NCBI RefSeq assembly: GCF_001194135.2
Contig: NC_068992.1
Location: forward strand, 8,851,018-8,889,796
Length of the DNA stretch: 38,779 nt
Reading direction: 5' to 3'
Source of the DNA: Octopus bimaculoides
Lineage: Eukaryota
In this document: in pieces, positions 5,071 through 37,070 of the stretch
How positions within the stretch are numbered: position 1 is the first letter of the stretch
Layout: the number at the start of each line of letters is the position of its first letter
The notes under the pieces: model-generated
What the model saw: only the letters and a program-made list of their open reading frames with translations
The model's database searches: none
Told to the model about the DNA's origin: nothing
Translations under genes and position numbers: made by a program

Positions 5071-6369
5071 ACAGTGTCTTATATATGTATATATATATAT
5101 GTATATATATATATGTATGTATATTCATTTAAAGTCATTTATGCATGTAAGTATACATGTAGATGTATAAGTATGTGTGTGTGTGTGTGTGAGTGAGTGT
5201 GTGTCTTTATGTCTGTGTCTGTTCTCCCCACTCATCACCGCTTGACAACCTGTGTTGATGTGCTTGCGTCCTCGTAACTTAGTGGTTCAGTAGAAGAGAA
5301 TGATAGAATAAGTACTAAGCTTTAAAAAAAGAAGTCTCGGAGTCGATCAGTTCGACTAAAAACCCATCAAGATGGTGCTCCAGCATGGCCGCAGTCAAAT
5401 GACTGGAACAAGCTAAAAAATATAGAATAAAAAAGTAAGATATTTTGAAGTTAATCTTTTGTTCTTGAATTACAAAACAGACACATCGAAATATAATCTG
5501 ATGTAGTGATCTCGATCCAGGATAAAATTAACTACATCACAATGCTGGCATTGTTTACAGTGTACAAATTTACATTTAAAATACTATTTTCCTCGTTGTA
5601 TAATGTTTTCACCACCACGTTCTTATTCAAATAGATTTGTCCAGCAAGACTAAAGTCGTATGAGATAACATCAGCGACTGAGTACTTATGGAGTCATTCA
5701 CTTTCAACTCCAGATTCGTACGTCTCTTCATGTTTGAAAATTTTATGTATTAAATTCTGACGTTGGCATCCAGCAGCGATGGCTGAGTCTTTCTGTAAAA
5801 AAGGCTTTCTCAACCGATCATAAGCCGCCTCATCTCACCTTCACTTCTGAAAGTAACGCCTGTCAATATCCCTATTGCTGTGAAAGCTTCCTCTTGAAGA
5901 TAGAACCGTATCGATTTTATTATCAATAGAATGACTTCTGTCTTTAGTCCAGTTGAATAACTCAGATGTTAGCAACAACGCTTATATATGCTTATTATCT
6001 TTTATNNNNNNNNNNNNNNNNNNNNNNNNNNNNNNNNNNNNNNNNNNNNNNNNNNNNNNNNNNNNNNNNNNNNNNNNNNNNNNNNNNNNNNNNNNNNNNN
6101 NNNNNNNNNNNNNNNNNNNNNNNNNNNNNNNNNNNNNNNNNNNNNNNNNNNNNNNNNNNNNNNNNNNNNNNNNNNNNNNNNNNNNNNNNNNNNNNNNNNN
6201 NNNNNNNNNNNNNNNNNNNNNNNNNNNNNNNNNNNNNNNNNNNNNNNNNNNNNNNNNNNNNNNNNNNNNNNNNNNNNNNNNNNNNNNNNNNNNNNNNNNN
6301 NNNNNNNNNNNNNNNNNNNNNNNNNNNNNNNNNNNNNNNNNNNNNNNNNNNNNNNNNNNNNNNNNNNNN

Positions 6370-6398
<29 letters not shown>

Positions 6399-9410: not shown

Positions 9411-10679
9411 ATGGGTTTCTTTCAGTTTCTGTCCACCAAATCCACTCACAAGGCTTTGGTCGGCCCGAGGTTATAATAGTAGACACCTATCCAAGATGTC
9501 GCACAGTGAGATTGAACCCGGAACCATGTGGCTGGGAAGCAAGCTTCTTACTACATATTCAAAGATGGCCAAAGCTCCTTCACAAGCCATAGGTTCATAA
9601 GGTCAGTTTACTGGATTCTGTGGCATATATACTCTTCTCTGGGCGGGACGCCGATCCGTCACAGTCGTNNNNNNNNNNNNNNNNNNNNNNNNNNNNNNNN
9701 NNNNNNNNNNNNNNNNNNNNNNNNNNNNNNNNNNNNNNNNNNNNNNNNNNNNNNNNNNNNNNNNNNNNNNNNNNNNNNNNNNNNNNNNNNNNNNNNNNNN
9801 NNNNNNNNNNNNNNNNNNNNNNNNNNNNNNNNNNNNNNNNNNNNNNNNNNNNNNNNNNNNNNNNNNNNNNNNNNNNNNNNNNNNNNNNNNNNNNNNNNNN
9901 NNNNNNNNNNNNNNNNNNNNNNNNNNNNNNNNNNNNNNNNNNNNNNNNNNNNNNNNNNNNNNNNNNNNNNNNNNNNNNNNNNNNNNNNNNNNNNNNNNNN
10001 NTGCTTATCATAAACAACTATGTCCTTCAATAAAACCCAGTCATTTAAACCAATAACAGTCTATAACTTATTACAACATATTCCACTGACATCGAAACTA
10101 TATTTAAACAATATATTTATTCTTCGAGAGTATATCTTTGTCCCCTTTTTCTCATAATCCCATTTTACCAGTTTTGATATTTTCTCACGCTTGCTATCAT
10201 TAACTATCCTGAATGATGATGGACTTTCTAGTCGAAGACGACGAATGCGTATCCAGCTTTTGCCGAACGGCCTACACAGATGATACGTTTGTAGTGATCA
10301 AACGTATGTGCTGTACATTAGTCCACTCTCTCCATTAAATCGACATTGCCTGAACAGGTGCCGAGTGTACCACGTGTCAAAAGACGGAGCGATCGTAGAG
10401 CAACGTGAGACGAAGTGTTTTGCTCAAGCGTACAACACACAACCTGGTCAAGAAACTAAAAGCACGATCTCGCGATCGTGAGTGCTGGGCCCTAATCACT
10501 AGGCAACGCGTCCTCCAGAATACGTATTTGATAAACCATATTACGACCACTTCACTGGCTTTTCAAAACCACTGTTCTTATTAATCTGTTATAGTTTATT
10601 TTTTCTACATCCTTTACATTAATGAACTTGATTTCTATATTTTTATATAATTTTTTTAATATGTCATTGTTATTGAAAC

Positions 10680-11348: not shown

Positions 11349-12072
11349 CAATTGTTCTTACCTGGGGTCCATATAAGATTTCTGGATGTCCGTGCAAGTA
11401 AAATAGTAAACTGAGGACCCACATTAGTATTTTAAGGGTTCATGAAAAATTTTGATTTAGAGGTATTTATTACGTTGCTTTCTCTAACATTTTACATAGT
11501 TGGACCTACACAAGTTAACGAGTAAAAAGCAAAATAGGAATTTTGAAAGAAGCATCAATAAAACTAGTTTTTAAATATTCTTTTCTACTCTAGGCACAAG
11601 GCCCGAAATTCTGGGGAGGGGGACAGTCGATTAGATCGGCCCCAGTATGCAACTAGTACTTAATTTATCGACCACGGCGGAACTTGAACTCAGAACGTAA
11701 AAGCAGACGAAATACCACTAAGTATTTCGCCCGGCGTGCTAACGTTTCTTATTTCTTTATTGCCCACAAGGAGCTAAACATAGAAGGGACAAACAAGGAC
11801 AGACAAAGGGATTAAGTCGATTACATCAACCCCAGTGTGTAACTGGTACATAATTTACCGACCCCGAAAGGATGAAAGGCAAAGTCAACCTCGGCGGAAT
11901 TTGAACTCAGAACGTAACGGCAGACGAAATACTGCTAAGCATTTCGCCCGGCGCGTTAACGTTTCTGCCAGCTCGTCACCTAGTTTTTAAATATTGAATG
12001 GCTATGGTGGTCTACCAAAATAAAATAGTAATCTAAGTGGTCCAAAGGGGGAAAAATGGTTGAGAACCACTG
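11349..12072. mobile_element. hAT (Charlie-like) MITE interrupted by a SINE dimer
   Basis: Right TIR ggttgagaaccactg followed by ctcta; degenerate left end caattgttctta-cctggggtcc. Split by the 11580-11979 insertion. Confidence 0.6.
11580..11979 (-). mobile_element. Dimeric family A SINE with 16-bp TSD
   Basis: Two tandem monomers with different tails, bracketed by ctagtttttaaatatt at 11564-11579 and 11980-11995. Confidence 0.85.
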
Positions 12073-13750: not shown

Positions 13751-15189
13751 CTACTTCTCGGGAAACTCCATGCGTTTAATATCTTAAATTTACCTATCGT
13801 AGACGCTGGCTTGGCTACGTGGCAAGAAGTTTTCTTCCCAACCACGTTATTCCGGGTTCAACTCCATTGTATGGCGCCTTGGGCGAGCNNNNNNNNNNNN
13901 NNNNNNNNNNNNNNNNNNNNNNNNNNNNNNNNNNNNNNNNNNNNNNNNNNNNNNNNNNNNNNNNNNNNNNNNNNNNNNNNNNNNNNNNNNNNNNNNNNNN
14001 NNNNNNNNNNNNNNNNNNNNNNNNNNNNNNNNNNNNNNNNNNNNNNNNNNNNNNNNNNNNNNNNNNNNNNNNNNNNNNNNNNNNNNNNNNNNNNNNNNNN
14101 NNNNNNNNNNNNNNNNNNNNNNNNNNNNNNNNNNNNNNNNNNNNNNNNNNNNNNNTATATATATATATATATATATATATTACAGTTCTATTTTTAAGAC
14201 ATGAGGAATTATGTACAATATTTACATTATTTACATTTGATGGATATTTGTCCTCATCTTGTTTGTTTGCGTGTGTGTATCTTTGAGGCTCTGTCTCCAA
14301 CCACTGCTTGACAACCAGCGCTGGTTTGTTCATGTCCCCGTTAACTAGCAGTTCGTCCAAAGAGACCGATAGTATAAGTACCACACTTAAACACTTATCC
14401 GGCTCGATTCGTTCGCATAAAGAAAAAAAATTCTTCAAGGTTCTACTCCAGCATGGCTGCAGTCTAATGGCCGGAACAAATAAAAGATAAAAAATATTGT
14501 GCAATCTCTGATTGGTATCGGATTTGACTTTTGCTCGCATCAGTTTGTTGTCCTTACAAATATATGTTGAAAGCTTGCTTCATGCAGACAAGAAATCCTC
14601 TAAAAAAGAAACAAGATAATAAATAAACCGCAAACTCCTTGAAAATTGCGCAAAAGAAAGAGTTGTTATTATTGTTCTTGTTGTTGCTTCGTTGCCTCAG
14701 GTCATGAAGTCGTGACATAGTTCACTTTAGACGACAATATCTAGTAGCAGCAACGTCTAGAATGTGCCCTGGGAAGGGATGGTACGGCGAAAGGAATATG
14801 ACGGTGATAGAGACGAGAAGAAGAAAAAAAAATGGGTGTGTGAGATAAGCAAAAGTACATTAAAGTGTGAAAGCTTCAAGATACAGTTTGAAAAAGGGAG
14901 GTCGTGAAGGTAATGAAGCTATATGCAAAAGAATAAAGCAAATGTTAGGAAGAAAATGAAAGGTGAAATACAAGCTGATCGATTTGAGAGGATCGATCTG
15001 GTAACAAGAAAAGGAGTTGTAAAATTTATGGCGACAGAAAGTAATTACGTCTCAGAATTTGCTTAGGAGAGAGTTTTCATCCCCGTGTAATATTCATAGG
15101 GATTCTCGACAACATAATTGGTTTCAAATTTTGGCACAAGGCCAGCAATTTCGGTGATGGGGAAAGTCGTTTACATCGACCCCAGGTGG

Positions 15190-15782: not shown

Positions 15783-17067
15783 GTTACAGACATTAAAGTA
15801 AATTTCGAATGCAGTATAGCTGTGAAAACAGCCGAGAGAAAGATTGGATATCTACCTCTTAGAAGACAAAAAAAGTTGTCTGCTGGTAACTCTCCCGGTC
15901 CTTTTAAAGTTTGTTTGCAATGTAATATACATACATTCTTACATGCATACATACATACATACATACATACATACATACATACATGCAATGCATATTGTTG
16001 TTATTGCGTTAAACTATATCCAAATTTGGTCAAATGCGCTTTTTTTTTCGATATTTATTTTTGCATGCAATAGCTGGTTCTTTTGGTCAAACTATCGTAT
16101 CTCCAGCTGCTTCAGATGTCAAGAAATGAAAATTGTCAAAAATGTAGTACAACGGTTTTGCTATGAAATGGTGAAACTATTTTTTCGTTTTCTGCAAAAG
16201 TAACGTTTTGGACTTACGGCACTTTTGCATAATAGCAACGATATATATGTATACACATACATGCATACATACATATATNNNNNNNNNNNNNNNNNNNNNN
16301 NNNNNNNNNNNNNNNNNNNNNNNNNNNNNTATATATATAGATATATAGATATGCGCGCGCACGCACGCACGCACACACGCGTACACAGACATATATATAT
16401 ATCAATGTTGACTTTCAAAAGTTTATATAATTTCAGTATTTCAGTAGTCATTGCTTTATACTATACAACTTGGTATGTTACTCTACTCTTATGTCTATAT
16501 TAGATAAACAAAGATTGCATTGTTTCGTCCAATTTCATTTCAGCTTTCTATTCTAATCTGTAGTGTTACCAATAGGATTTTGTCCTTCTAATCTCTAGGT
16601 TTTTTCGTTTTCTTCTTTTGACCCAATTGTATCTTGTTTTCTGCTCAGTCGCTTTCAAAGTATTTGTTTTTCAAGTGATAGAACAATAAGTAAAGTAGAT
16701 ACCAAATGTCTTTTTTTTTTCCTATATCATGTTTCCTAAAACACGTTGCCTCGGTGTGTATGTGTGTGTGTGTTTCACGTACATAAAATCTCTACTCATG
16801 GTGGGGAGACAATGCTTTGCTCTTTAAGAGGTTTTAAATTCGAGCGTGAGTGGAGGTTCACTCTAACTTTATGCAGGAGTACCAAGATAGATTCGCCGAT
16901 AAAATAGGCGCAGGCGTGGCTGTGTGACAAGAAGCTTGCTTCGCAACCACATAGTTACGGGTTCAGTCCCACTGCGTGGCACCTTGGGCAAGTGTCTTCT
17001 ACTATAGACTTGAGCCGATCAAAGACTAGTGAGTGGATTTGGTAGACGGAAACTGAAAGAAGCATGC

Positions 17068-17469: not shown

Positions 17470-18395
17470 GAGTGGTCTTCCGCACAGTTTCAATCGATCG
17501 AATTTCACTCAAAAGGAATTGATTGAGTGGTGACTGAAAACAAGGCAAGACATTTGCCAATGATGTTTCACAGCTGGATCAAACTAGAAAAATGTAGTCT
17601 CAAAGCAAATTCCAAAACCTCACTGCCATGCAGACATATTTTCTAACAAGTTTTATATTGTCTCTAATAAGAAGAAATATGTCAAATATTAGCCATAAAG
17701 AAACCGATTTTGAGTGTCATTAACAACTAGAAAGCGTTTTCAATGAGTTGGCAAATTTATGTTTATTACTCCTCGTTTTGGGAAAAGAAAAGTAGGAGAA
17801 AAGAAAAGCAAACCCTTGATAGTAAATTGGTGCATTATGACATCTCATTTCTTAACTATACATCATTAAATTATTCCTATTAATACACATTCGACCCACT
17901 TTTTCATACATTTGATAAACAGCGGGAAGTATTGACCAGGTCGTAGAAGTACGACATAAAACTTAGATATCTAATAATAGCAATAATCCTTTCTACTATT
18001 GACACAAGAACTGACATTTGAGGGAAGGGAGCAAGTTGATTACATCGACCCCAGTGTTTCACTGGTACTTAATTTATCGACCCCGAGAGGATGAAAGGCA
18101 AATTCAACTCAAAACGTAGCGACGGGCGAAGCTAAACGATTCTGCCAGCTCACTGCATTAATGATAATAATCCTTTCTGCTGGATGCTCAAGGCCTCAAA
18201 ATTGTGGGCAGGGTACTAGTCGATTATATCGACCCCGGTGCTTCACTGATACTTAATTTATCGACTCCGAAAGGATGAAAGGCAGAATCGACCTCGGTGG
18301 AATTAGAGAGAACTCAGAACGTGATGACAGACACAATACTGCGATACGTTTCGCCCGGCGTGCTAACGATTCTGCCGGCTCGCGGTCTTAATAAC

Positions 18396-18426
<31 letters not shown>

Positions 18427-18679
18427 ATGATAATAATTTCTTTTATTTACCACCAGGGCGAAGGATGAGGAGTACACCACAAAGACGGGCTTAACGTGTG
18501 GGGGTTTACATATAATAAAATGATAAAAGAAAAGGAATATATACGATAAAACAAAGAAAGGAAGTACACATAATATACAATAGTAAAAGGATCCTCCTGT
18601 ATTTTCCTTTACTCAAAGCCTGGAACTTTTCACCACCCCTCATATGTATGTATATGTGTGTATGTGTGTGTGTGTGTGC

Positions 18680-18900
18680 AGAAACGTTAGCACACCGGGC
18701 GAAATGCTTAGCCGTATTTCGTCTGCCGCTACGTTCTGAGTTCAAATTCCGCCGAGGTCGACTTTGCCTTTCCTCCTTTCGGGGTCGATTAAATAAGTAC
18801 CAGTTACGCACTGGGTCGATATAATCGACTTAATCCGTGTTTGTCTGTCCTTGTTTGTCCCCTCTGTGTGTAGCCCCTTGTGGGTAGTAAAGAAATAACA
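18680..18900 (+). mobile_element. Well-preserved family A SINE with tail ...gtttgtcccctctgtgtgtagccccttgtgggtagtaaagaaata
   Basis: Near-consensus head, gagttcaaattcc B-box and core. The same tail occurs reversed at 11745-11810 and 17100-17160. Confidence 0.9.
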
Positions 18901-19873
18901 CATATATATATATATGTATAAATGTGTGTGTGTATATATTATTCATATATAAAAATCTTTAATAATAAATAATAAATCTTCAAATAATAAATAAAATATT
19001 CAAAACCACATTGTGATAAAAATATATTGAAATTTGAATTTTTAAGAATCTTTTTGACAGTGTAGATTTTAATAGTTGCTCTTATTTAGTGAAAAGTTAT
19101 ACACTCCAATCTAATTGATAAGTAGTTTTCTTTATTATAATTCAATAAACCTTACGTGAAACTTCACGTATGTGGTTTGTAAAATACGGTAGTGACAAAT
19201 AAGTAAATAAATTTAAACATGGAGATCTCCCAATGAATAACTGATTTTACGATTTGATTGGAAAAGGATGACCATAACACCAAAAATCAAAACAGGCCAT
19301 AAAAATTACATCTTTATGAAAACTTTCAGCTTGGAATTATTAAGAATTCTACTATACATTTTAAACTGACTAGGAAGGTTACTGTAGCTTTGGTCACATA
19401 TTTTTCTTAAACCCTGGTACTCATAAGATCAGTTACCTGGTTTCCATGACGTATAAGTAACCAATATTTTGAAGGAAGGGGACAAGTCGATTACGTCGGC
19501 CCCAGTACTGGACTAGTACTCTATTTTATCGACCCCTAGGGGATGAAAGACTCAGTTGACTCTAGGGGATTTGAGCTCGGAACGTAAAAGTCCTGAACAA
19601 ACGCCGACTCGCCGCTAAGCATTATGTCCGACGTGCTAACAATTCTGCTTGTTCATCATGTTTATTTGGAGATGTTTTAACTGCTTCTCTCTCCGTTATA
19701 ATTAAGTGTGTGTATGCAAGTGTGGATGCCTATACGCATGAAGTTTCTTGGAGAAATTGACTCAATATAAGAATAATCCGAGAAAAATATGGAAATAGAG
19801 AGAGAAATCATACTTGAACATATATGCATAATTATAATGTAATTAATCTTTTTTTTTTTTTTTACAATTTCAG

Positions 19874-19936
19874 AGTATACCTGTGCGTGGATAATATTAA
19901 TACAAATGCTTCACCTATCAGTATTCCATCTTCAAG
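19874..19936 (+). CDS. Probable upstream exon of the 3CxxC gene (coding or 5' UTR)
   Basis: Long poly-T tract plus acaatttcag acceptor and perfect aag|gtaagt donor. 63 nt, phase 2/2, open in frame with the next exon (VYLCVDNINTNASPISIPSS|S-MEMVW), but with no in-frame Met. Confidence 0.65.
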
Positions 19937-20052
19937 GTAAGTGAAGTACATATTTCAATATATTTCAAAGGATTAAGGCGGCGAGCTGGCAGAATCGTTA
20001 ACATTTCGGGGCAAAATGCTTCGAGGCATTTCGTCAGTCTTTACGTTATGAG

Positions 20053-20418
20053 AGTGCGGAGGTGCAATGGTCCAGTGGTTAGGGCAGCGGACTCGCGGTC
20101 ATAGGATCGCGGTTTCGATTCCCAGACCGGGCGTTGTGAGTGTTTATTGAGCGAAAACACCTAAAGCTCCACGAGGATCCGGCAGGGGATGGTGGCGAAC
20201 CCTGCTGTACTCTTTCACCATAACTTTCTCTCACTCTTACTTCTTGTTTCTATTGTACCTGTAATTCAAAAGGTCACGCTGAATATCCTCGAGAACTACG
20301 TTATGGGTACACGTGTCTGTAGAGTGCTCAGCCACTTGCACGTTAATTTCACGAGCAGGCTGTTCCGTTGATCGGATCAACTGGAACCCTCGACGTCGTA
20401 TGCGACGAAGTGCCAACA
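20053..20418 (+). mobile_element. SINE family C inserted into a family A SINE
   Basis: A-box tggtccagtggttagg and B-box ggtttcgattccc. Flanked by acgttatgag at 20043-20052 and 20419-20428; the host SINE resumes afterwards. Related heads at about 10330-10510(-), 10935-11010(-), 27310-27620(+) and 32440-32575(-). Confidence 0.85.
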
Positions 20419-22062
20419 ACGTTATGAGTTCAAACTACGCCGAGGTCGAGGTCGACTTTGCCTTTCATCCTTTCAGGCTCGATAAATGTGATTGCGTCGC
20501 ATTATGAAGAGGTGCTGACTGAGTCATTTAAGCATTAATGTGAGACTGATTTTCCCCAATGTTTTCAAAATGAAAATTAACCGCAGTCACTCATGTGCAA
20601 ACCGTAATCTGCGCGACTTTCAAAATGGCGTGCTTAACGAAAAATTATTTTGAATTTTTATTTAATGTTGCGGCCCGCCTGGTGATGAGCGCGCTTCTCG
20701 ATAAAGATTGCCCATGCCTGTTTTAAATTCAAGGAGGAAAATATAAGCAGTAAATCCGCTCTCTCTGTTTTCTTTATTGTTGAGCAATTAATGATCTAGG
20801 ATCCAAAAGAAGAAATCAAGAAAGCCTTTTAAGCTATAAACTGTCTTCTCTCCTTAAGAAATGCGTAACTTTGTAAAATGTAGAATTTATTTGTCTCAAG
20901 TCATTCTATGCTGATATCTCTAAGGAAGATGAAATAGTGCTATACGTGGCTACCAACAAGGTTGTAATGTGTAGGGACAAAATTATATGCATATGAATTA
21001 TATGTATATGCTCTATACACCTTAACTCTGATGTAAATTCCAAATTTTCAAATATGCCTCAACTTAATTTAGAAGTCTTTGTATCCCTTATAATAGTTAG
21101 CTGTCAAGGGTACACACTATCTTAGAGGAGATAACTCGAAAATTTTTCTGATTTCCTAAATGTCGTCGTTTCCTATTCGTCGTTTAAACCCTACTGTGAT
21201 TGTTTCTGATGTTGAAAATACTGGATGTAATCAAATCCACTATATTTATGATCGATACTGTCATAATTTAGACTCTTTAAATTGCCTCTGAAATAGTTGG
21301 CAAATTTTTTTTGGGGAACATTGGAAAATGATTTTCTTTTCTTAAATTTTGTAATATGTTGAAAATGTATTTCTAATTCAATGGAGTGAATTGCAATAGT
21401 TTCAGGGTAACAAGAAACTTTAGGATTACATTACTTTAGTACAGATTACGTTTCAATGCTGTACAGGTGTTAAGGTCGTTAACCGTATGTTATTAATACC
21501 CAAGATATACATTACCAACTAAAACACTACATATTTGTGTAAAGTGTCTCTGTTTTTTAAATTTTTTACCCAGTATGCTTATGCGCTCGCTCCACTTCAT
21601 TTATTTATACAAACCTATAAACAGATAAATATACTTATATACGATAGCACATTTGCAAAGTACATTTAGTAATGGAATTTTGTTAGTATATTGCTGCAGG
21701 TATAATAGGTTGACTTCCGGGGGCCATTATATTTTGCCAACAACACTACCCTCTGTTGGGCAATACGTACATTCACTTTTTGTGTTTGGTAACATTGCAC
21801 TTCGAAAATCTAAAAGTAAAGATAAATGGTAATGATGTTCAATCTTGCTTCGGAAATCGTTACGTAATCTTTATCACATCTTTGTCTCTTGAGGTCTGTT
21901 GTAGAAAATTAATTTGAATGTTTATCATAATATACAGGAAACAAAGGAAAATAAAATGCAGAAATGTCGGACGATCTTCTTTAATCTCTTTAGTATACGA
22001 ATGCTTTAAATCTGAGGCTGAAACTTTTTAGAAATCAGTATTTATATAGAATAGTGTTTGTG

Positions 22063-22097
<35 letters not shown>

Positions 22098-22377
22098 AAT
22101 GGGTTGCAACGTAATAAGAATTACGCGGTTTCTTTACTGGACGAAATCAGGCGTTTGTATTCACATATATGTATGCATGTATGCAAACTCATGTGTGTCT
22201 AAACATCTCTAACTTGCCATTACCGCTGCTCCCATGCTGTCACACCACCACAAACGTAACAGCTGGAAGTAATATTGATAACAATTTTAAACTGAGATGT
22301 TTTACTTTCATTAAAAATATTTCTTTTCGATCTGCAACGAAAAAATATGGAAACATTTTTTCATTTTCTTTTCTTAG

Positions 22378-22522
22378 TATGGAGATGGTATGGCATGGGG
22401 AATTCGATCGGCTGTTTTGTCAATACTTCCCAGACCAATGGCACCTCTTGTCCACTCATTACCCACCAAGTAATCGATGGAGAACCTTTAAAGACAGTGC
22501 GAAAGTCAGATTTTCTTGTCAG
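22378..22522 (+). CDS. Exon of 3CxxC zinc-finger (RTP-like) gene, N-terminal part of domain
   Basis: Acceptor ttttcttttcttag, donor cag|gtaaaa. From ATG 22379 it encodes MEMVWHGEFDRLFCQYFPDQWHLLSTHYPPSNRWRTFKDSAKVRFSCQ, matching the W..F / D.W.L / W / A..RF.C start of RTP-type 3CxxC domains. Ends in phase 0. Confidence 0.9.
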
Positions 22523-22963
22523 GTAAAAGAGAAAATTATTTCTTCATTAGTTTGTCAAGTTTTTTTTTTGTTTCTTTTTTCTTCGAATTTTTAGTCTTAA
22601 TCAGTGAAGATAAGGTAACGCCCACGAGCTTCGAAAGTGATGAAGTGAAGGAAGGAAGCTATCCTCGAACCAGAAACTCTAGCTTGAATGCTTGCAAAAG
22701 TTACATGATGTGTGTGTGTATGTGTGTTATACGGTGAGGGATTAATTTATCCTCTTTAATAAATATTTCTGAATATCAATTCAAATAATTGTAATTAAAT
22801 AGTTTAATGAATACTGAAGGGATAACAAATGAGTAACATATAATACTATTTTAAAATAGCTTTTAAGACTTTTACTAACAATCAATTTCTTAAAAATACA
22901 TATTTGCAGGCCTGTTTTTATCAGATACTATTTGGTATCCGTCGCTATGGAAATAGTATGATA

Positions 22964-23563
22964 TTTTTACCTCTGCCTTAACAAAGGCGGAGGTATTGTT
23001 TTCAGTCGCGTTTGTTTGTTTGTTTGTTTGTCCATGGACAAGATATCTCAAGAACCACTGGATGGATTCAGATGAAACTTTCAGGGATGTTTGGTACCGT
23101 GACTGACACGAACTGATTAGATTTTGGGATCGATCTGGTACCGGACAAGGATTCTGGATTATTTGTTATATTTACTTTACATGATTATGATCTTACGTTA
23201 ACTTTCAAGTCTTTCTCAATTATCTCTCTTTAGGCTGTAACTCTTTAGAATGGTGAATTTGTTAACTTTGGCTTGTATTAGATAAGGATAAACTATTTAT
23301 TACTGTTACTAAATTTTCTACGGCCACCTTCACATTCCATGACTACCATTAGAATAGAATAATCCAGACAGGATTTTGGATTACTTTTCCGAGTTTTTTA
23401 CTTAATTGTTTTTGAGCGGTCGCGTTCGTTTTTAGTATTCTCGTTAGTGAGAACAGTCCAGTTTATTTCAGATATTCTCATTTTAAAAATAATCTCTGGC
23501 TAATCATTGAGAGGACATTAGTGTTGCCTTGGAAGAGGTTTGCGCTCTCTGAGTGTTCTTGTT
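22964..23563 (+). mobile_element. DINE-1/HINE-like non-autonomous Helentron
   Basis: T-run, 5' inverted repeat acctctgcctt-aaca-aaggcggaggt (22969-22994), (GTTT)n, internal repeated ggattctggatta unit, 3' sub-TIR ttggaagaggt, hairpin gcgctc-tct-gagtgt and terminal TT. Confidence 0.75.
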
Positions 23564-24864
23564 CATATTCTATCTTTCTAAACTAAATTAGTTATTCAAT
23601 GACGTCACTCTTGGTTGGATGAATAAATGTCTAAAGTTAAATTTGGTTTGGGGTTTCTTTTGGTTAGCGTTTATTAAGAGCTAAAATTCTTCAGATGTTC
23701 AGTTAGAATTTCACCTATTTGGATAACCTTGATAATGTTGTGTTGACATAATTTTTCGTATATGTTATTATTAATTTTAATAATATTATGCATATACATA
23801 TATATCGGTATGTGTGTNNNNNNNNNNNNNNNNNNNNNNNNNNNNNNNNNNNNNNNNNNNNNNNNNNNNNNNNNNNNNNNNNNNNNNNNNNNNNNNNNNN
23901 NNNNNNNNNNNNNNNNNNNNNNNNNNNNNNNNNNNNNNNNNNNNNNNNNNNNNNNNNNNNNNNNNNNNNNNNNNNNNNNNNNNNNNNNNNNNNNNNNNNN
24001 NNNNNNNNNNNNNNNNNNNNNNNNNNNNNNNNNNNNNNNNNNNNNNNNNNNNNNNNNNNNNNNNNNNNNNNNNNNNNNNNNNNNNNNNNNNNNNNNNNNN
24101 NNNNNNNNNNNNNNNNNNNNNNNNNNNNNNNNNNNNNNNNNNNNNNNNNNNNNNNNNNNNNNNNNNNNNNNNNNNNNNNNNNNNNNNNNNNNNNNNNNNN
24201 NNNNNNNNNNNNNNNNNNNNNNNNNNNNNNNNNNNNNNNNNNNNNNNNNNNNNNNNNNNNNNNNNNNNNNNNNNNNNNNNNNNNNNNNNNNNNNNNNNNN
24301 NNNNNNNNNNNNNNNNNNNNCATACATACATACATACATACATACATACATACATACATACATACATACCTTAAAATAATTTTATTTTCAACTCAATGTT
24401 TAGTTTTTCTTTTTAAACGGTTTCTGTTTATTTCTCTATTATCCTCTCCATATTTGTTACTGTCCTTGAAGACAGTTTTGTTTTTAATTTTGTTCGTGTT
24501 TTGTATCTTTCTTGTATTAGTTTCCATTTATTCATTGCAAGTTTTTATTATAGTCTTGCAATTAATAGCTTTATAGTTGCATAAGGACGCTACTCTCTTT
24601 GTATTTATGACAAATATATTATATCTACAGTCATTATTTTCCTTCTTTTGCTCTCGTGTCCTGCTAATTCATTTAGATTCCAGTAGAGAATAATATAGCT
24701 ATACTTTATTACTGGGATAGATAAAATCTTGATACCCGTTACTTTTTTGCAGTAATTTTTATTTAAAGTATTAACGCAACACATTTATAATATTTCTTCT
24801 TTTCTTTAATTTATGACGAGTTCAGTAATTCCTAGATATTATTTTTTTCTTATATTTGTTATAG

Positions 24865-25035
24865 CAATGTGGTCATGGTTGGACTTCGATGAAAGGCAGA
24901 GTTATATTTTGGTTTCATTTGAATTTCGCAACTAGTTCTGGTTATGTGATGTTTAAATTATATGGCCAACAATGCATGCGATGTAAAAATGGTTGTTATG
25001 AACCAGCAATGTGGTACCCTGAAGAAGTTGTAAAA
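24865..25035 (+). CDS. Exon of 3CxxC zinc-finger (RTP-like) gene, core of domain
   Basis: Acceptor tatttgttatag, donor aaa|gtgagt, 171 nt, phase 0/0. Encodes QCGHGWTSMKGRVIFWFHLNFATSSGYVMFKLYGQQCMRCKNGCYEPAMWYPEEVVK. Joined to the previous exon it gives CQQC-x-H-x-WTS ... G-x-V ... GQQCMRC, which aligns with RTP CxxCxHxWxS...GxV...QxCxxC. Confidence 0.92.
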
Positions 25036-25402
25036 GTGAGTGAATTAACTTTCCATTATTACATTTGTCTCTGCTTCTGTTTTCGTCTCGGTCTGTCTGT
25101 CTCCACTCTCTATTCTCCCTCTGTCTATATATATATATATATATATATATNNNNNNNNNNNNNNNNNNNNNNNNNNNNNNNNNNNNNNNNNNNNNNNNNN
25201 NNNNNNNNNNATGATAGATCGCTAGCCACTATGCCTTTTTCTATTTTCACTCCCTGTTTATTTCTTTATTTCCTTTCTGTCGAAGAGTGTAAGCTCGAAA
25301 CGTAAAAGACTTTCTCACTTCCCGAGTGTTAAACTAATACATCTGTTTGTTGTTTATATACCCGTCTTCGTCTTTTGTGTTTTTTTTTTTGTAAATTCTC
25401 AC

Positions 25403-25450: not shown

Positions 25451-27290
25451 CAGTAACATTGTAGACATATTGCTGAAGCCTATTCTAAAATACATACCAA
25501 GCGTTGTAAGATGTGACTGAGGCCTGTTAAACCACCTCTCAGAAAATATGTAAACCGTCTCACATATATAATAAAGTAAATCTCTATCCTACTATCTCAT
25601 GCACTATAGATCAGAAGCCATACAATTCCTCAATGAAAATTTCCTCAATGAAATACCAGAGCGAATAGATAAAAATAAATTACTGCAGGAATTAAATTTA
25701 TCGCACAAAATGATTTTTTCAACTTTAGTGACAACATTTACGAACAAATACCTCGAACTGCAATGAGAATGGTGGTTGCCCCAACGTACACCAATTTGGT
25801 CATGGCATCCGTTGGCGTCCAAATATGCGAACAATCCAGACTGAAGTACCACATCGACTTCTCCAAATTATCTATTAAAAAATTGGAGAGATAACTTAGA
25901 TGACTACTTCATTCTGGTTTTGACCAACTTATTGATTTCAAAATTTTGATTAATAAACAACGGGAATAATAAACACTATGGAATAGAAAATCGACTGTCC
26001 TTCCTGGATATCTTAAAAATAAAAAAAGGATATAAATATTGAAACTGACAGCCACTACAAATATACAGACTCTTAAAAATGCTTATTAAACTCTTGCGAT
26101 GCAAAACATACGAAAACGAATGTAACTGTTTCATCTATAACGAAGAATATATTCATTCATTTCGAATTTTGAAACTCAAAATATAAGACTCCAAGAATTA
26201 TACCAAATTCTACTTGAAACCCAGTCTTCGAAAAAATTATTAATGTAATAGAACGTGACAAGGCAAAAGAGGTTTAAGAATCACATATTACAAAAATAAT
26301 GCGCCAAATATTCTGCCTTACGTCACAACAGATAACTCGAGAAAAACAGAAACATTCAATGCAAGATCGAAGAATGAAACAAGCACTCGAAATACACAAA
26401 ATAATCAAAAGCAAAAAACAACCTAAATTTCTAAAAGTATTGCTTACTAACGCCAAATTATCCACCGCTTACACAACACCTATACTAAAAAAAAAATGCG
26501 GTCAGCCTGACTGCAGAATTTGCATCAACATTATAGAAGACATTATAAATTCACATCAGAACATATTTCACTGGAAAAAAAATCTCTTCATTTGTACATC
26601 AAAAATCTTAATTTATACTACAAAATGTAACAGCTGTAATGAAGATTTCACAAGGTAAAAGAAGCGCTCCGCAAGAAACAAGACTGGGTATTCATAGGCA
26701 GTAAATACTAAATTCTAATGACGGGACAGATTCTGCTAAGTGAACACCTAAGATTTACGTGCAACAAACAAATCACCAAAATTCCTAGCATGGCAATTTA
26801 AGCCAGAATTTCTCTATAAAAAGGAGTAAATGTTTTAATTCCAGTCAGACTCGAGACAATACGACATTGTTCTCAGTCCTTTCATTTACAGTATTTCCAG
26901 TATGATGGAATTGTAAAATGGTTAAGTAAATGTAAATAAATATTTTGAAAGACTTCAAGCGCATTTTTATTTTTTCCTTTCTTTATACTGCACGTCTATA
27001 TTCCTCTGTGTGTGTATTTGTGAATATGTTAACTAATATATACTAACTTTACTAATTTGCTTTTATTAACTAACATACAAAACTATATCATTCTGTACAT
27101 CTTACTTAACACGGATATTCTATCAAAAGCCACAAATATTATCATCAATGTGTTCACTAACGTGAGTCAACGGTTATCATGTATTAGTAGTTGTGAAGAC
27201 GATGGCTAGAAGAATGCGAAGAATCTCATGTATTTCATTCGTCATAAGAGATATGCACACACTAGATTATGCAACCCGCCTGAAACTAAC
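25445..27290 (+). mobile_element. Penelope-like element remnant (RT plus GIY-YIG)
   Basis: Degenerate TAMxxxVAPTYTNLVM (~25758-25806), W-R-x-LDDYFIL (~25884-25915) and LSFLDIL (~25990). Followed by CGQPDCRIC...FICTSKILIYTTKCNSC, the Cys-rich linker and start of a GIY-YIG endonuclease. Confidence 0.75.
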
Positions 27291-28110
27291 AGAAAAATAG
27301 CTCGAATTGAGAAAAGATATGGCTCAGCAGTTTGAGCTTCAATCGTGAGATAGTGAGTTTGATTCCTGGACCGGGCTGTGTGTTGTGTTCTTGAGCAAGA
27401 CACTTTATTTCACGTTTCTCCAGTTCACTGAGCTGCAGAAATGAGTTGCGACGTATCAGGTTTTCCCTTGGACAACATCGGTGGCGTGGAGAGGCGAGAC
27501 TGGTATGCATGGGCTTCTACCGGTCTTCCACAAACAAACAACCTTACCGGACTTGTGCTTCAGAGGGGAACTTTCTAGGTGCAATCCCATGGTCATTCGT
27601 AACTGAAGGGGTCTCTTTCGCCCTTCTCTTTATATATNNNNNNNNNNNNNNNNNNNNNNNNNNNNNNNNNNNNNNNNNNNNNNNNNNNNNNNNNNNNNNN
27701 NNNNNNNNNNNNNNNNNNNNNNNNNNNNNNNNNNNNNNNNNNNNNNNNNNNNNNNNNNNNNNNNNNNNNNNNNNNNNNNNNNNNNNNNNNNNNNNNNNNN
27801 NNNNNNNNNNNNNNNNNNNNNNNNNNNNNNNNNNNNNNNNNNNNNNNNNNNNNNNNNNNNNNNNNNNNNNNNNNNNNNNNNNNNNNNNNNNNNNNNNNNN
27901 NNNNNNNNNNNNNNNNNNNNNNNNNNNNNNNNNNNNNNNNNNNNNNNNNNNNNNNNNNNNNNNNNNNNNNNNNNNNNNNNNNNNNNNNNNNNNNNNNNNN
28001 NNNNNNNNNNNNNNNNNNNNNNNNNNNNNNNNNNNNNNNNNNNNNNNNNNNNNNNNNNNNNNNNNNNNNNNNNNNNNNNNNNNNNNNNNNNNNNNNNNNN
28101 NNNNNNNNNN

Positions 28111-28729
28111 AATCCAGTACCGGGATTGATTTAATCAACTTTCCTCTTCCCTTAAAAACTGCTGGCCCTGTGCCAAAATTTAAAACCATTGTTCTGTATA
28201 AGGTGACAAGCTGGCAGAATCATTATCATGCTTAGCGACCCTACATTCTGTGTTCAAATACTATTGAGGTCAACTACAACTTTCATCCTTTCGGAATCGA
28301 TAAAATAAGTACCAGTTGAGTACTGGGTCGATATAATTGACTAGCCCCTCCTCACACCCAAATTTCAAACCTTGTGCCTATAACAGAAAGGATTATTTGC
28401 TTTGTGTAAGACGACGCCCTGACAGAATCGTTAGCATTCCGGACAAAATGCTTAGCGGCATTACGTCTTTCTTTACGTACCGAGGCAGACTTTGCCTATT
28501 ATCTTTTCGGGGTCGGTAAAATAGGCACCAATCCAGTACCGGGATTGATTTAATCAACTTTCCTCTTCCCTTAAAAACTGCTGGCCCTGTGCCAAAATTT
28601 AAAACCATTGTTCTGTATAAGGTGACAAGCTGGCAGAATCATTATCATGCTTAGCGACCCTACATTCTGTGTTCAAATACTATTGAGGTCAACTACAACT
28701 TTCATCCTTTCGGAATCGATAAAATAAGT
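28111..28729. repeat. 200-bp identical direct repeat (28111-28310 = 28530-28729)
   Basis: Base-for-base identity at offset 419. The first copy begins immediately after an N gap. Confidence 0.9.
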
Positions 28730-32639: not shown

Positions 32640-32900
32640 ATCTTTAAAATTTCTTTTATCATAGGATTGTTCTTTCAAGAGGCACACTTACGTAATCTGA
32701 TGTAATTACGTCTGTTTACATCAATATAAAGATGTGTATACGTATAAGGATCCTTTCTGTTGAACTGATTGCCAACATTTACAGAACATACAATACCAAC
32801 TTTAGATATATCGAAGAACAAAGGCTACACTTATTAACTTTTCCTCGGTAAGTTTTCTAAGTGTAGCATTACAAACTGGGAAGGTGTACGTTCTATAACG
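32640..32900 (-). mobile_element. Possible second Penelope-like fragment
   Basis: Minus strand IVCSVNVGNQFNRKDP...LYIDVNRRNYIR weakly resembles IVF.S.KIGN.F..KD...YIG.T.R.L. Confidence 0.35.
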
Positions 32901-35754: not shown

Positions 35755-37070
35755 GTAAAACGATCCTTTAACCGACGTAAGTACATAAAATCGAACCTTT
35801 GTTCTATAATGAGTGACAGTAGACTGTCTGGGTTAGCTAGGCTCTCTACTGAAAGACTATTGACCACAGAGGAAGGTTATAAAAAAATTAATATATTTAA
35901 GACTAAATGCGAGACGAAAAAAGTTGTATTGCTGTGTACGGTTTTTGAAGTGTTTCGTTTTGTTTTTATTTTATATTCAAAATGTGAAATTAAATAACTC
36001 TCATGTTTCTCCCCCCCCCCTCTCTCTCTCTCATGGTTTGAATACAATGGTTGAATACAATTATTAGTTTATGTGTTACTAAATAGTTACAATAGCTATT
36101 TCATATTGTAATTCTTCCAGTTTCAACACAAGTTTCAAGCATTTTCTTTGGATTTCCCTTTCCCATTAGTCGTAATTGATTTTGTTGATTCGTCCTGGTC
36201 GGCTCTGGCCAAGCAAATCTTATGATCAAAGGCGGTTATTCTAGCTTTGGCTATTCCTTCTGATTAATGTCCTGTGAGACTACGTTCGACAAAACACTTG
36301 TAAATGAAATGACCCATATATATACACACACAACCTGAACGTTACTTAATGTTACAGGTTCAATGGCTGTTTTATTGCATGTATGGACTAAACAAGTCTT
36401 TTAAATCATACTTTTGTTTATAATTTACATGTATTGGTGGCATGTATTCGGTTTTGCTTATTTACATATTTACATCTTGAAGTTGGCTTTTCTGTTGCTA
36501 ATGTTACAGTTGTTGTTGCTGTGATTGGGGCAAACATTGTTTACAATAACATTACATTTGAATATCTTAAATGAATATTTAAATAGGTGATAAAAACTAA
36601 AAAGAAAAAACTGTATAAATGCATTTATCTCCCTTTTTGTCATGAGCATCCATGTAAATTTTCCACTGCTCCCCTCCGTGGGGGGAGGCGATACTCTCCC
36701 TTTTGAGAAGCATTGACGTAAAGGTTTCTTGTCAGCATTAACTGTACAAACGCACACACATACATATATTTAATATATCACGTGATCGACCAGACTATCG
36801 GATGTTGTAATACATCGGTGGTCACAGTGTGTTTTGCATAGTTTTAGCTTTCGAATGATGCTATCCTATTAGCTAAGCGAGCAGGACAACAGACTCTCTG
36901 TTCGGAGAGCTAATCCATAGCAGGGTTACCCGTTCGCAGTTGAGTTGATTGGAGCAACGTAAAATGAAAAGGTTTTCTCAACAACACCCTAGCCACGAGG
37001 CCACACGCCTTCATATATTCATATATANNNNNNNNNNNNNNNNNNNNNNNNNNTATATATATATATATAT

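What the first reader, a model, noticed from the sequence alone, without database searches (positions are those of the whole stretch)
19874..25035. Spliced 3CxxC zinc-finger (RTP-like) gene hidden across introns
Seen: three exons with canonical splice sites and compatible phases build MEMVWHGEF...RFSCQ|QCGHGWTS...GQQCMRC...WYPEEVVK, and a phase-0 intron splits the first CxxC itself. Established: 3CxxC domains define vertebrate RTP1-4, which traffic odorant, bitter-taste and opioid receptors (RTP4 is also an interferon-induced antiviral RNA binder), and ZAR1. Inference: a cephalopod member could be a chemoreceptor chaperone or an antiviral factor. The ORF track shows it only as two unrelated fragments.
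Basis: partly seen in the sequence, partly recalled or inferred. Interest (0 to 1): 0.75.

Follow-up and report, generated by a model that had tools for sequence, protein, structure and literature searches.

The report
Annotated octopus 3CxxC zinc-finger gene, truncated
The three exons are real and form the middle of an already annotated Octopus bimaculoides gene for a small, very conserved zinc-binding (3CxxC) protein, whose last exon is missing from the assembly and which is only a distant relative of the vertebrate receptor-transporting proteins.

Summary
Exons 19874-19936, 22378-22522 and 24865-25035 have canonical AG/GT sites and compatible phases, and a phase-0 intron splits C-Q|Q-C. The spliced peptide hits Pfam Zn_ribbon_3CxxC (E 3.6e-12). 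The 23818-24320 gap lies inside intron 2. Argonauta's gap-free gene, cephalopod mRNA contigs and orthologues from many phyla join its two sides the same way.

The gene is not hidden. The window is O. bimaculoides chromosome CM046612.1, and the gene is public as XP_014780923.1, XP_014780924.1 and UniProt A0A0L8GHR2.

The window holds coding exons 2-4 of 5. The start exon (MHLVNEI...) lies upstream of the window. The last exon, which carries the third CxxC, is absent from the assembled letters and is probably in the gap at 25151-25210 or 27638-28110. All three public models therefore end wrongly and cover about half the domain.

The protein belongs to a pan-bilaterian invertebrate family (57-94% identity, dN/dS about 0.01). 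It has no membrane anchor and no vertebrate among the named top hits. "RTP" is an automatic name, not shown orthology. The likeliest activity, by analogy with RTP4 and ZAR1, is zinc-dependent RNA binding. This is inferred. RNA-seq junction reads could not be obtained.

The parts
19874..19936 (+). Coding exon 2 of 5 (63 nt, phase 2 in and out). It encodes (P)VYLCVDNINTNASPISIPSS(S), part of a disordered N-terminal extension.
   Evidence: AG/GT sites and open frame. Included in XP_014780923.1. The peptide is conserved in Argonauta (IYLCVENNVNTNTSPVSIPSS) and in an mRNA contig of another cephalopod.
19937..22377 (+). Intron 1 (2441 nt). It contains a tRNA-like SINE-type repeat near 20056-20130 and a (GT)21 array at 22054-22095.
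22378..22522 (+). Coding exon 3 of 5 (145 nt). It encodes MEMVWHGEF...AKVRFSCQ, with an internal Met at 22379 and the first Cys of CxxC-1 at 22517-22519. It ends in phase 0.
   Evidence: Its boundaries match Argonauta exon L002:13817-13960.
22523..24864 (+). Intron 2 (phase 0). It splits C-Q|Q-C and contains the assembly gap 23818-24320, which is flanked by (CATA)12.
   Evidence: Exon-level ORFs from mollusc-, spider- and echinoderm-like genomic contigs show an intron at the same position.
24865..25035 (+). Coding exon 4 of 5 (171 nt, phase 0/0). It encodes QCGHGWTSMKGRV...GQQCMRC...WYPEEVVK, with Cys50 at 24868-24870, Cys85 at 24973-24975 and Cys88 at 24982-24984. It has no stop codon; the donor GT is at 25036-25037.
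   Evidence: It equals Argonauta exon L002:15608-15778.
25151..25210 (.). Assembly gap 115 nt after exon 4, flanked by (TA)12. It is the first candidate site for the missing last coding exon (VIGNVYNR.GQ..YGF.RPPLRIDRR.GKPRNQHN..LCQACKEG.C...).
   Evidence: In Argonauta the last exon lies only 666 nt after the equivalent exon. No trace of it exists in the assembled letters of the window or of the 55-kb locus L001. The location is an inference.
27638..28110 (.). Second candidate gap (473 N) for the missing last exon.
   Evidence: Inference only.
25610..25636 (+). Terminal coding piece of RefSeq isoform X2 (IRSHTIPQ*). It is not conserved and is probably an artefact of the missing true exon.
26331..26426 (+). 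Terminal coding piece of UniProt model A0A0L8GHR2 (DNSRKTETF...*). It is not conserved.
32665..32700 (+). Terminal coding piece of RefSeq isoform X1 (DCSFKRHTYVI*). It is not conserved.

Best explanation
Shown: window 19874-25035 holds coding exons 2-4 of a five-exon, already annotated Octopus bimaculoides gene (XP_014780923.1, XP_014780924.1, UniProt A0A0L8GHR2). The gene is the octopus orthologue of a small (about 150-250 aa) 3CxxC zinc-binding protein found across invertebrate bilaterians: molluscs, brachiopods, annelids, nemerteans, bryozoans, chelicerates, myriapods, crustaceans, nematodes, echinoderms, hemichordates, amphioxus and tunicates.

Shown: the start exon (MHLVNEIVRYVPAGV...) lies about 2.5 kb upstream of the window, beyond a 1261-N gap. 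The last exon is not in the assembled sequence. In relatives that exon encodes a long helix, a basic RR.GKPR..HN loop and the third CxxC. The three public octopus models are therefore C-terminally wrong and cover only about half of the Pfam domain.

Inferred: the missing exon sits in the gap at 25151-25210 or 27638-28110.

Inferred mechanism: the complete protein is soluble. It has a disordered Pro/Ser/Thr-rich N-terminal tail and a compact core in which eight invariant ligands could bind two zinc ions. These ligands are the three CxxC pairs plus one His and one Cys. In both characterised clades of this domain, RTP4 and ZAR1, the 3CxxC domain is the RNA-binding module. The core here is basic (pI about 8.9) and under extreme purifying selection. 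The most likely activity is therefore zinc-dependent binding of RNA, or of one conserved partner, in a conserved cellular process. I put this at about 0.45. I rate it above receptor trafficking and above pathogen-driven defence.
For: Gene structure: exon coordinates, splice sites and phases. Pfam PF13695 scores 47.1 bits, matching profile positions 2-55 of 100 only.

Identity: the window equals L001:12492-51270 of GCA_001194135.2 CM046612.1. P0001, P0054 and P0055 contain these exons at 100% identity.

Orthologues: 57-94% identity over 105 aa. An exhaustive HMMER search found 811 representatives at E<=1e-3 and 105 at E<=1e-30.

Missing last exon: the Argonauta gene has five exons with identical boundaries, and its last exon lies 666 nt after exon 4. 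Pfam covers profile positions 2-100 of 100 in Argonauta, against 2-55, 2-56 and 2-78 in the three octopus models. No exon-5 sequence is found in the window or in L001.

Junction: mRNA contigs from five runs join exons 2 and 3 directly.

Constraint: pN is 0.027-0.05 against pS of 0.75-0.86. None of 19 orthologues has a hydrophobic segment (maximum 19-residue Kyte-Doolittle score 1.43). Most end 8-14 residues after the third CxxC. The core pI is 8.9.

Ligands and fold: invariant C92, C95, C130, C133, H184, C189, C192 and C197 in Argonauta numbering. The AlphaFold core has pLDDT above 90.

Analogy: the RTP4 zinc-finger domain binds viral RNA (PMC10470548), and the ZAR1 ZF-3CxxC domain is its RNA-binding domain (PMC12799850).
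Against: Transcript support is therefore cross-species plus the RefSeq models. The location of the last exon in a gap is inferred from its absence and from Argonauta's short intron. The first gap is nominally only 60 N. RNA binding is by analogy only: there is no solved structure or structural neighbour and no experiment on any member of this invertebrate family in the searched literature. An amphioxus gene labelled 'RTP3' was among the top 15 genes induced by poly(I:C) (PMC5752451), so an immune role for some invertebrate 3CxxC genes is not excluded.
Confidence: 0.78

Rival explanations
1. One reading: an RTP-type chaperone that escorts cephalopod chemoreceptors or GPCRs to the cell surface.
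For: The gene has the same Pfam domain as RTP1-4. The whole domain aligns with RTPs, though that rests only on a human RTP4 sequence recalled from memory and unverified (about 23% identity). The TM anchor of mammalian RTPs is reported to be dispensable for trafficking, and fish RTPs lack it (PMC8172065).
Against: The family is about 60-80% identical between phyla with unrelated chemoreceptor repertoires, and dN/dS is about 0.01. None of 19 orthologues has a membrane anchor. Only one O. bimaculoides protein cluster appeared among the hits. No receptor gene is evident in the 38.8-kb window. The literature dates the RTP family to jawed vertebrates (PMC8172065).
Confidence: 0.08
2. One reading: an inducible antiviral RNA-binding effector like RTP4.
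For: The 3CxxC domain of RTP4 is its antiviral, RNA-binding core (PMC8172065, PMC10470548). An amphioxus gene annotated 'RTP3' is strongly induced by poly(I:C) (PMC5752451).
Against: Extreme purifying selection and apparent single-copy conservation are the opposite of the arms-race pattern described for RTP4. Amphioxus also has divergent 3CxxC paralogues (P0224), and which gene was induced is unknown. Molluscs have no interferon system (established knowledge).
Confidence: 0.12
3. The octopus gene really lacks the last exon, either as a truncated or decaying gene or as a genuine short isoform with two CxxC, and the RefSeq C-termini are real.
For: Three independent public models end without the third CxxC. 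No exon-5 sequence exists in 55 kb of assembled letters.
Against: Exons 2-4 are intact and under strong constraint against Argonauta and another cephalopod. Both of those relatives have the last exon. Two gaps lie exactly where the exon is expected. The three public C-termini disagree with each other and none is conserved.
Confidence: 0.05

Closest known systems
RefSeq XP_014780923.1 / XP_014780924.1 ('receptor-transporting protein 4 isoform X1' / '3 isoform X2') and UniProt A0A0L8GHR2, Octopus bimaculoides
   Same: This is the same gene. The three window exons are present in all three models at 100% identity with the same junctions.
   Different: The public models add a start exon outside the window. 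They end in three different, non-conserved C-termini (window 32665-32700, 25610-25636 and 26331-26426). None has the third CxxC.
Argonauta hians 'receptor-transporting protein 4-like' (P0076, 204 aa) and invertebrate orthologues (Lingula, gastropods, bivalves, chiton, ticks, spiders, horseshoe crabs, centipede, echinoderms, hemichordates, amphioxus, Styela)
   Same: Identity is 94% (Argonauta) down to about 57% over the 105 window-encoded residues. Argonauta has the same five-exon structure and phases. The family shares invariant CGHGWTSMKGR, KLYGQQC..C and MWYPEEV.KV motifs.
   Different: The relatives carry the final exon with the helix, the basic loop and the third CxxC, which the octopus assembly lacks. 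N-terminal extensions vary in length. The family is uncharacterised in the searched literature.
Vertebrate RTP1-4 (odorant, taste and opioid receptor chaperones; RTP4 is an interferon-induced RNA-binding antiviral)
   Same: They share the Pfam domain PF13695, placed at the N-terminal end of a short protein. In RTP4 the domain is the functional core and binds RNA (PMC8172065, PMC10470548).
   Different: Similarity is distant: no vertebrate appears among the named top hits, and identity to a recalled, unverified human RTP4 sequence is about 23%. The octopus family has no C-terminal TM anchor and no variable central region. It is extremely conserved rather than fast-evolving. The RTP family is dated to jawed vertebrates (PMC8172065).
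ZAR1 / ZAR1L (maternal mRNA-binding proteins)
   Same: They carry a 3CxxC domain that acts as the RNA-binding module (PMC12799850).
   Different: In ZAR1 the domain sits at the C-terminus after a long disordered region that drives condensate (MARDO) localisation. Here the N-terminal tail is only about 46 residues, and the protein also has an N-terminal helix (MEMVWHGEF...) that is part of the conserved core.

Membership tests
Pfam PF13695 Zn_ribbon_3CxxC superfamily | Profile-HMM match above the gathering score | tested here: met
   47.1 bits against a cut-off of 23, E 3.6e-12, for the 105-aa spliced peptide.
Pfam PF13695 Zn_ribbon_3CxxC superfamily | Three CxxC motifs with full-length domain coverage | tested here: inconclusive
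   The window encodes only CQQC and CMRC, matching profile positions 2-55 of 100. The third motif (CQAC) is present in Argonauta and all full-length orthologues. Its exon is absent from the assembled octopus sequence.
Conserved invertebrate-bilaterian 3CxxC family (MEMVWHGEF...CGHGWTSMKGR...MWYPEEV.KV) | High identity across the core to members from many phyla, including the invariant motifs | tested here: met
   57-94% identity at 100% query coverage, E 1e-36 to 1e-72. The invariant columns are listed.
Conserved invertebrate-bilaterian 3CxxC family (MEMVWHGEF...CGHGWTSMKGR...MWYPEEV.KV) | Shared gene structure (intron positions and phases) with a close relative | tested here: met
   All boundaries match the Argonauta hians gene. 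Exon-level ORFs from other taxa show the CxxC-splitting intron and the intron after EEV.K.
Vertebrate RTP1-4 | Orthology or monophyly with vertebrate RTPs | tested here: inconclusive
   No vertebrate appears among the named proteins in the top 120 or among the 20 representatives that were looked up. No verified vertebrate sequence was available for a tree. A recalled human RTP4 sequence gave about 23% identity, and more to a divergent amphioxus paralogue; this is a lead only.
Vertebrate RTP1-4 | C-terminal transmembrane anchor (amniote RTPs) | tested here: not met
   None of 19 full-length orthologues has a hydrophobic 19-mer above 1.43. The proteins end 8-14 residues after the third CxxC. Caveat: fish RTPs also lack a TM (PMC8172065).
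Vertebrate RTP1-4 | Promotes surface expression of GPCRs, or is interferon- or virus-induced | not testable with these tools
   Needs cell assays or expression data.
ZAR1/ZAR1L | 3CxxC domain at the C-terminus of a protein with a long conserved N-terminal disordered region | tested here: not met
   The N-terminal tail is only about 46 residues, and the conserved core starts with its own helix.

The most novel reading that the evidence does not exclude
The octopus gene belongs to an uncharacterised, ultra-conserved 3CxxC family that is a separate and older lineage than the vertebrate RTPs. Amphioxus keeps both a conserved orthologue and divergent RTP-like paralogues. Vertebrates appear to have lost the conserved lineage or let it diverge beyond ready recognition. 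The family would then be a core bilaterian RNA-binding or partner-binding zinc protein whose function nobody has studied, mislabelled 'RTP3/4-like' across hundreds of genomes.
Probability: 0.4. Interest if true: 0.5.

Novelty: already known. Interest (0 to 1): 0.25.

Why it matters
As a gene discovery it adds nothing, because RefSeq and UniProt already hold the gene with the 3CxxC domain flagged. Two modest points remain. First, all public O. bimaculoides models of this gene are C-terminally wrong because the last exon fell into an assembly gap. Anyone using them, for example in RTP phylogenies or domain counts, inherits a half domain. Second, the 'RTP-like' label hides an invertebrate-wide, very strongly constrained family. 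It has no membrane anchor and no studied member. It may also lack a vertebrate orthologue. That makes it a reasonable target for a first functional study of what the ancestral 3CxxC domain does.

Tried and rejected
RNA-seq junction test. One run search worked: about 20 runs from several organisms hold exon 4 exactly.

Search for the missing last exon.
- tblastn and blastn with Lingula, Nucella, Argonauta and cephalopod-mRNA C-termini against the window and the 55-kb locus found nothing, even at E 1000.
- A database search with the Argonauta exon-5 peptide returned only two bivalve-like genomic fragments.

Intron positions in other phyla. Look-ups for the Lingula, amphioxus and Pycnogonum genes found no record. 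Exon-level ORFs were used instead.

Structure. There is no PDB sequence match and no significant Foldseek match for a confident AlphaFold model (best E 0.23).

Literature. 'Bombystatin', the name NCBI gives a Sarcoptes member, appears in no paper. '3CxxC' appears in 16 papers, none on invertebrates. One broad search was badly designed and uninformative.

Readings considered and rejected.
- A second gene or paralogue in the window: none found.
- A tRNA gene in intron 1: ARAGORN finds none.
- Coding sequence running through the 23818-24320 gap: rejected, because the gap is intronic.


Full report
**What is in the sequence.** Each is bounded by a polypyrimidine-AG acceptor and a GT donor. One frame is open through all three and reads VYLCVDNINTNASPISIPSS-S-MEMVWHGEF...AKVRFSCQ|QCGHGWTSMKGRV...GQQCMRC...MWYPEEVVK. 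The exon 2/3 junction is phase 0 and falls between the two middle residues of the first CxxC (C-Q|Q-C). The mechanical ORF list shows the gene only as two unrelated fragments. The 105-residue peptide starting at MEMVW hits Pfam PF13695 (Zn_ribbon_3CxxC) at 47.1 bits against a cut-off of 23, E 3.6e-12. The match covers only profile positions 2-55 of 100.

**The assembly gap.** The 503 N at 23818-24320 lie entirely inside intron 2 (22523-24864), so no reading frame has to cross them. The real question is whether the two sides belong to one gene, and three results say they do. The Argonauta hians gene (L002) has no N and has the two exons 1.65 kb apart, in the same order and with the same boundaries. 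mRNA-like contigs of another cephalopod, from five independent runs (L003-L007), place exon 2 and exon 3 sequence directly next to each other. Orthologues from many invertebrate phyla read through RF.C..CGHGW without a break. I could not obtain O. bimaculoides junction reads.

**The gene is already annotated.** The window is identical to L001:12492-51270 of Octopus bimaculoides assembly GCA_001194135.2, chromosome CM046612.1. The gene is public in three models:
- XP_014780923.1, 'receptor-transporting protein 4 isoform X1'
- XP_014780924.1, 'receptor-transporting protein 3 isoform X2'
- UniProt A0A0L8GHR2, '3CxxC-type domain-containing protein'

**The true N-terminus.** The public models begin with a further exon, MHLVNEIVRYVPAGVTIPTSLSPPTP, at L001:10001-10078. 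It has an in-frame stop 13 codons upstream. It lies about 2.5 kb upstream of the window start, beyond a 1261-N gap. This N-terminal extension, and the exon-1 peptide, are conserved in Argonauta and in the other cephalopod's mRNA. An MHL[VIL]N motif also recurs in bivalve orthologues. Exon 19874-19936 is therefore coding, and MEMVW is probably an internal methionine in cephalopods. In many other phyla the protein does start at that Met.

**The missing C-terminus.**
- Full-length orthologues continue after EEVVK with V.GNVYNR.GQ.YYGF..PP.R.DRR.GKPRNQHN..LCQAC..G.C and end a few residues later.
- In Argonauta this is one exon, 666 nt downstream of the exon equivalent to 24865-25035.
- Nothing like it exists in the assembled letters of the window or of the 55-kb locus, even with very permissive protein and DNA searches.
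- The three public models instead end in three different, non-conserved pieces at 25610-25636, 26331-26426 and 32665-32700.
- Pfam covers profile positions 2-55, 2-56 and 2-78 of 100 in those models, against 2-100 of 100 in Argonauta.

Two gaps lie just downstream: 25151-25210 (115 nt after the exon, flanked by a TA microsatellite) and 27638-28110. I infer that the last exon is in one of them. My estimate is about 0.4 for the first gap, 0.35 for the second and 0.25 for elsewhere. This inference is not shown.

**The family.** A profile search found 247 relatives. The named ones among the best 120 are all invertebrates: molluscs, a brachiopod, annelids, a nemertean, a bryozoan, chelicerates, myriapods, crustaceans, a nematode, echinoderms, hemichordates and amphioxus. 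Styela, a tunicate, was added. Identity to the octopus peptide is 94% (Argonauta), 74-82% (other molluscs and Lingula) and 57-67% (arthropods and deuterostomes). An exhaustive HMMER scan of 1.84 billion representatives gave 811 hits at E<=1e-3 and 105 at E<=1e-30. None of the 20 representatives whose names I looked up was a vertebrate.

**Selective constraint.** Between octopus, Argonauta and the third cephalopod, synonymous sites are near saturation (pS 0.75-0.86) while pN is 0.027-0.05. The one computable dN/dS is 0.012.

**Architecture.** None of 19 full-length orthologues has a hydrophobic segment (maximum 19-residue Kyte-Doolittle score 1.43), and most end 8-14 residues after the third CxxC. 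The core pI is 8.9. Eight potential zinc ligands are invariant: three CxxC pairs, one His and one Cys. That is enough for two zinc sites; this is an inference. AlphaFold gives a confident core (pLDDT above 90): an N-terminal helix, four long beta-strands carrying CxxC-1 and CxxC-2, a long helix and a C-terminal loop. The N-terminal tail is disordered. The window encodes the helix and the strands. The missing exon encodes most of the long helix, the basic loop and the third CxxC. There is no PDB relative by sequence or by fold.

**Comparison with known families.** The domain is shared with vertebrate RTP1-4 and with ZAR1. In RTP4 the 3CxxC zinc-finger domain is the antiviral core and mediates binding to viral RNA (PMC8172065, PMC10470548). 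In ZAR1 it is the RNA-binding domain (PMC12799850). Boys et al. date the RTP family to jawed vertebrates. They also report that fish RTPs lack a TM domain and that the TM domain is dispensable (PMC8172065).

The octopus family has no membrane anchor and no variable central region, and it evolves very slowly. That is the opposite of the arms-race pattern described for RTP4. It gave about 23% identity to Argonauta and amphioxus orthologues, and 29-30% to a divergent group that includes an amphioxus paralogue. Because that sequence is unverified, this is a lead and not a test. It hints at two ancient lineages.

An amphioxus gene labelled 'RTP3' was among the 15 genes most induced by poly(I:C) (PMC5752451). 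Which lineage it belongs to is unknown. The searched literature contains nothing on the invertebrate family.

**Verdict.** The gene is neither hidden nor new. It is incomplete in this assembly, and the functional suggestions are unsupported. The best reading is a soluble, two-zinc, probably RNA-binding protein of a conserved invertebrate-bilaterian family. The 'RTP' name is an automatic label based on the shared domain. Interest is low for the finding as stated. Modest interest attaches to the mis-annotated C-terminus and to the uncharacterised conserved family.

Noticed in passing
window 6006-6369, 9669-10001, 13889-14155, 16279-16329, 23818-24320, 25151-25210, 27638-28110, 37028-37053: There are eight assembly gaps in 38.8 kb. 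The gaps examined are flanked by microsatellites: (CATA)12 at 24321-24369, (TA)12 at 25126-25150, and IYIYIY-type ORF edges at several others. Repeat-induced breaks are therefore the likely cause of the lost exon.
   Followed up: partly
window 20056-20130 (intron 1); related pieces at about 11847-11912, 18734-18912 and 28243-28521; Argonauta L002:2286-2347, 6259-6378, 18347-18503: A tRNA-like head sequence (ARAGORN calls no tRNA) and a dispersed repeat that translates to ...RP.RK(D/E)ERQSRPRRNLNSE recur in the window and in the Argonauta locus. This is probably a SINE-type family shared by octopods.
   Followed up: partly
proteins P0165, P0167, P0169, P0172, P0173 and others: Many unnamed proteins of 600-1200 aa from Logan assemblies carry a well-conserved copy of this family's domain at their extreme C-terminus (E about 1e-60). 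Pfam detects no other domain in the two scanned, P0165 and P0167. Their taxon and the function of the long N-terminal part are unknown.
   Followed up: partly
proteins P0076, P0075, P0062, P0065; L001:10001-10015: A short MHL[VIL]N motif at or near the N-terminus is shared by cephalopod and bivalve orthologues, although the rest of the N-terminal tail is variable and predicted to be disordered.
   Followed up: no
L003:698-1423 (P0075): The 241-aa database protein reads through a stop after ...EEWSFT. The standard-code translation shows '*' there and the database protein shows W, as if it were called with a TGA=Trp code. The real product is about 194 aa.
   Followed up: yes
protein P0147 (Sarcoptes scabiei): NCBI names this family member 'bombystatin'. 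The word occurs in none of the 8.3 million searched papers, so the origin of the name is unclear.
   Followed up: partly
protein P0056 (Ixodes scapularis, 222 aa): This model contains one full copy of the protein followed by a second partial copy (MEQVWQAEF...VRFCCE). It is either a tandem duplication or a mis-joined model.
   Followed up: no
proteins P0224, P0223, P0233, P0235, P0225, P0244: A second, more divergent 3CxxC group has a GWKQF motif, and some members have a C-terminal hydrophobic anchor. It includes an amphioxus 'RTP4-like' paralogue. It looks more like vertebrate RTPs than the octopus family does.
   Followed up: partly
window 26299-26658 (+): A 119-aa ORF with a Cys-rich stretch (CGQPDCRIC...CNSCNEDF) overlaps, in another frame, the terminal exon of the UniProt model. 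It may be a mobile-element remnant.
   Followed up: no
Simple repeats or the tRNA-like element are the likely cause.
   Followed up: no
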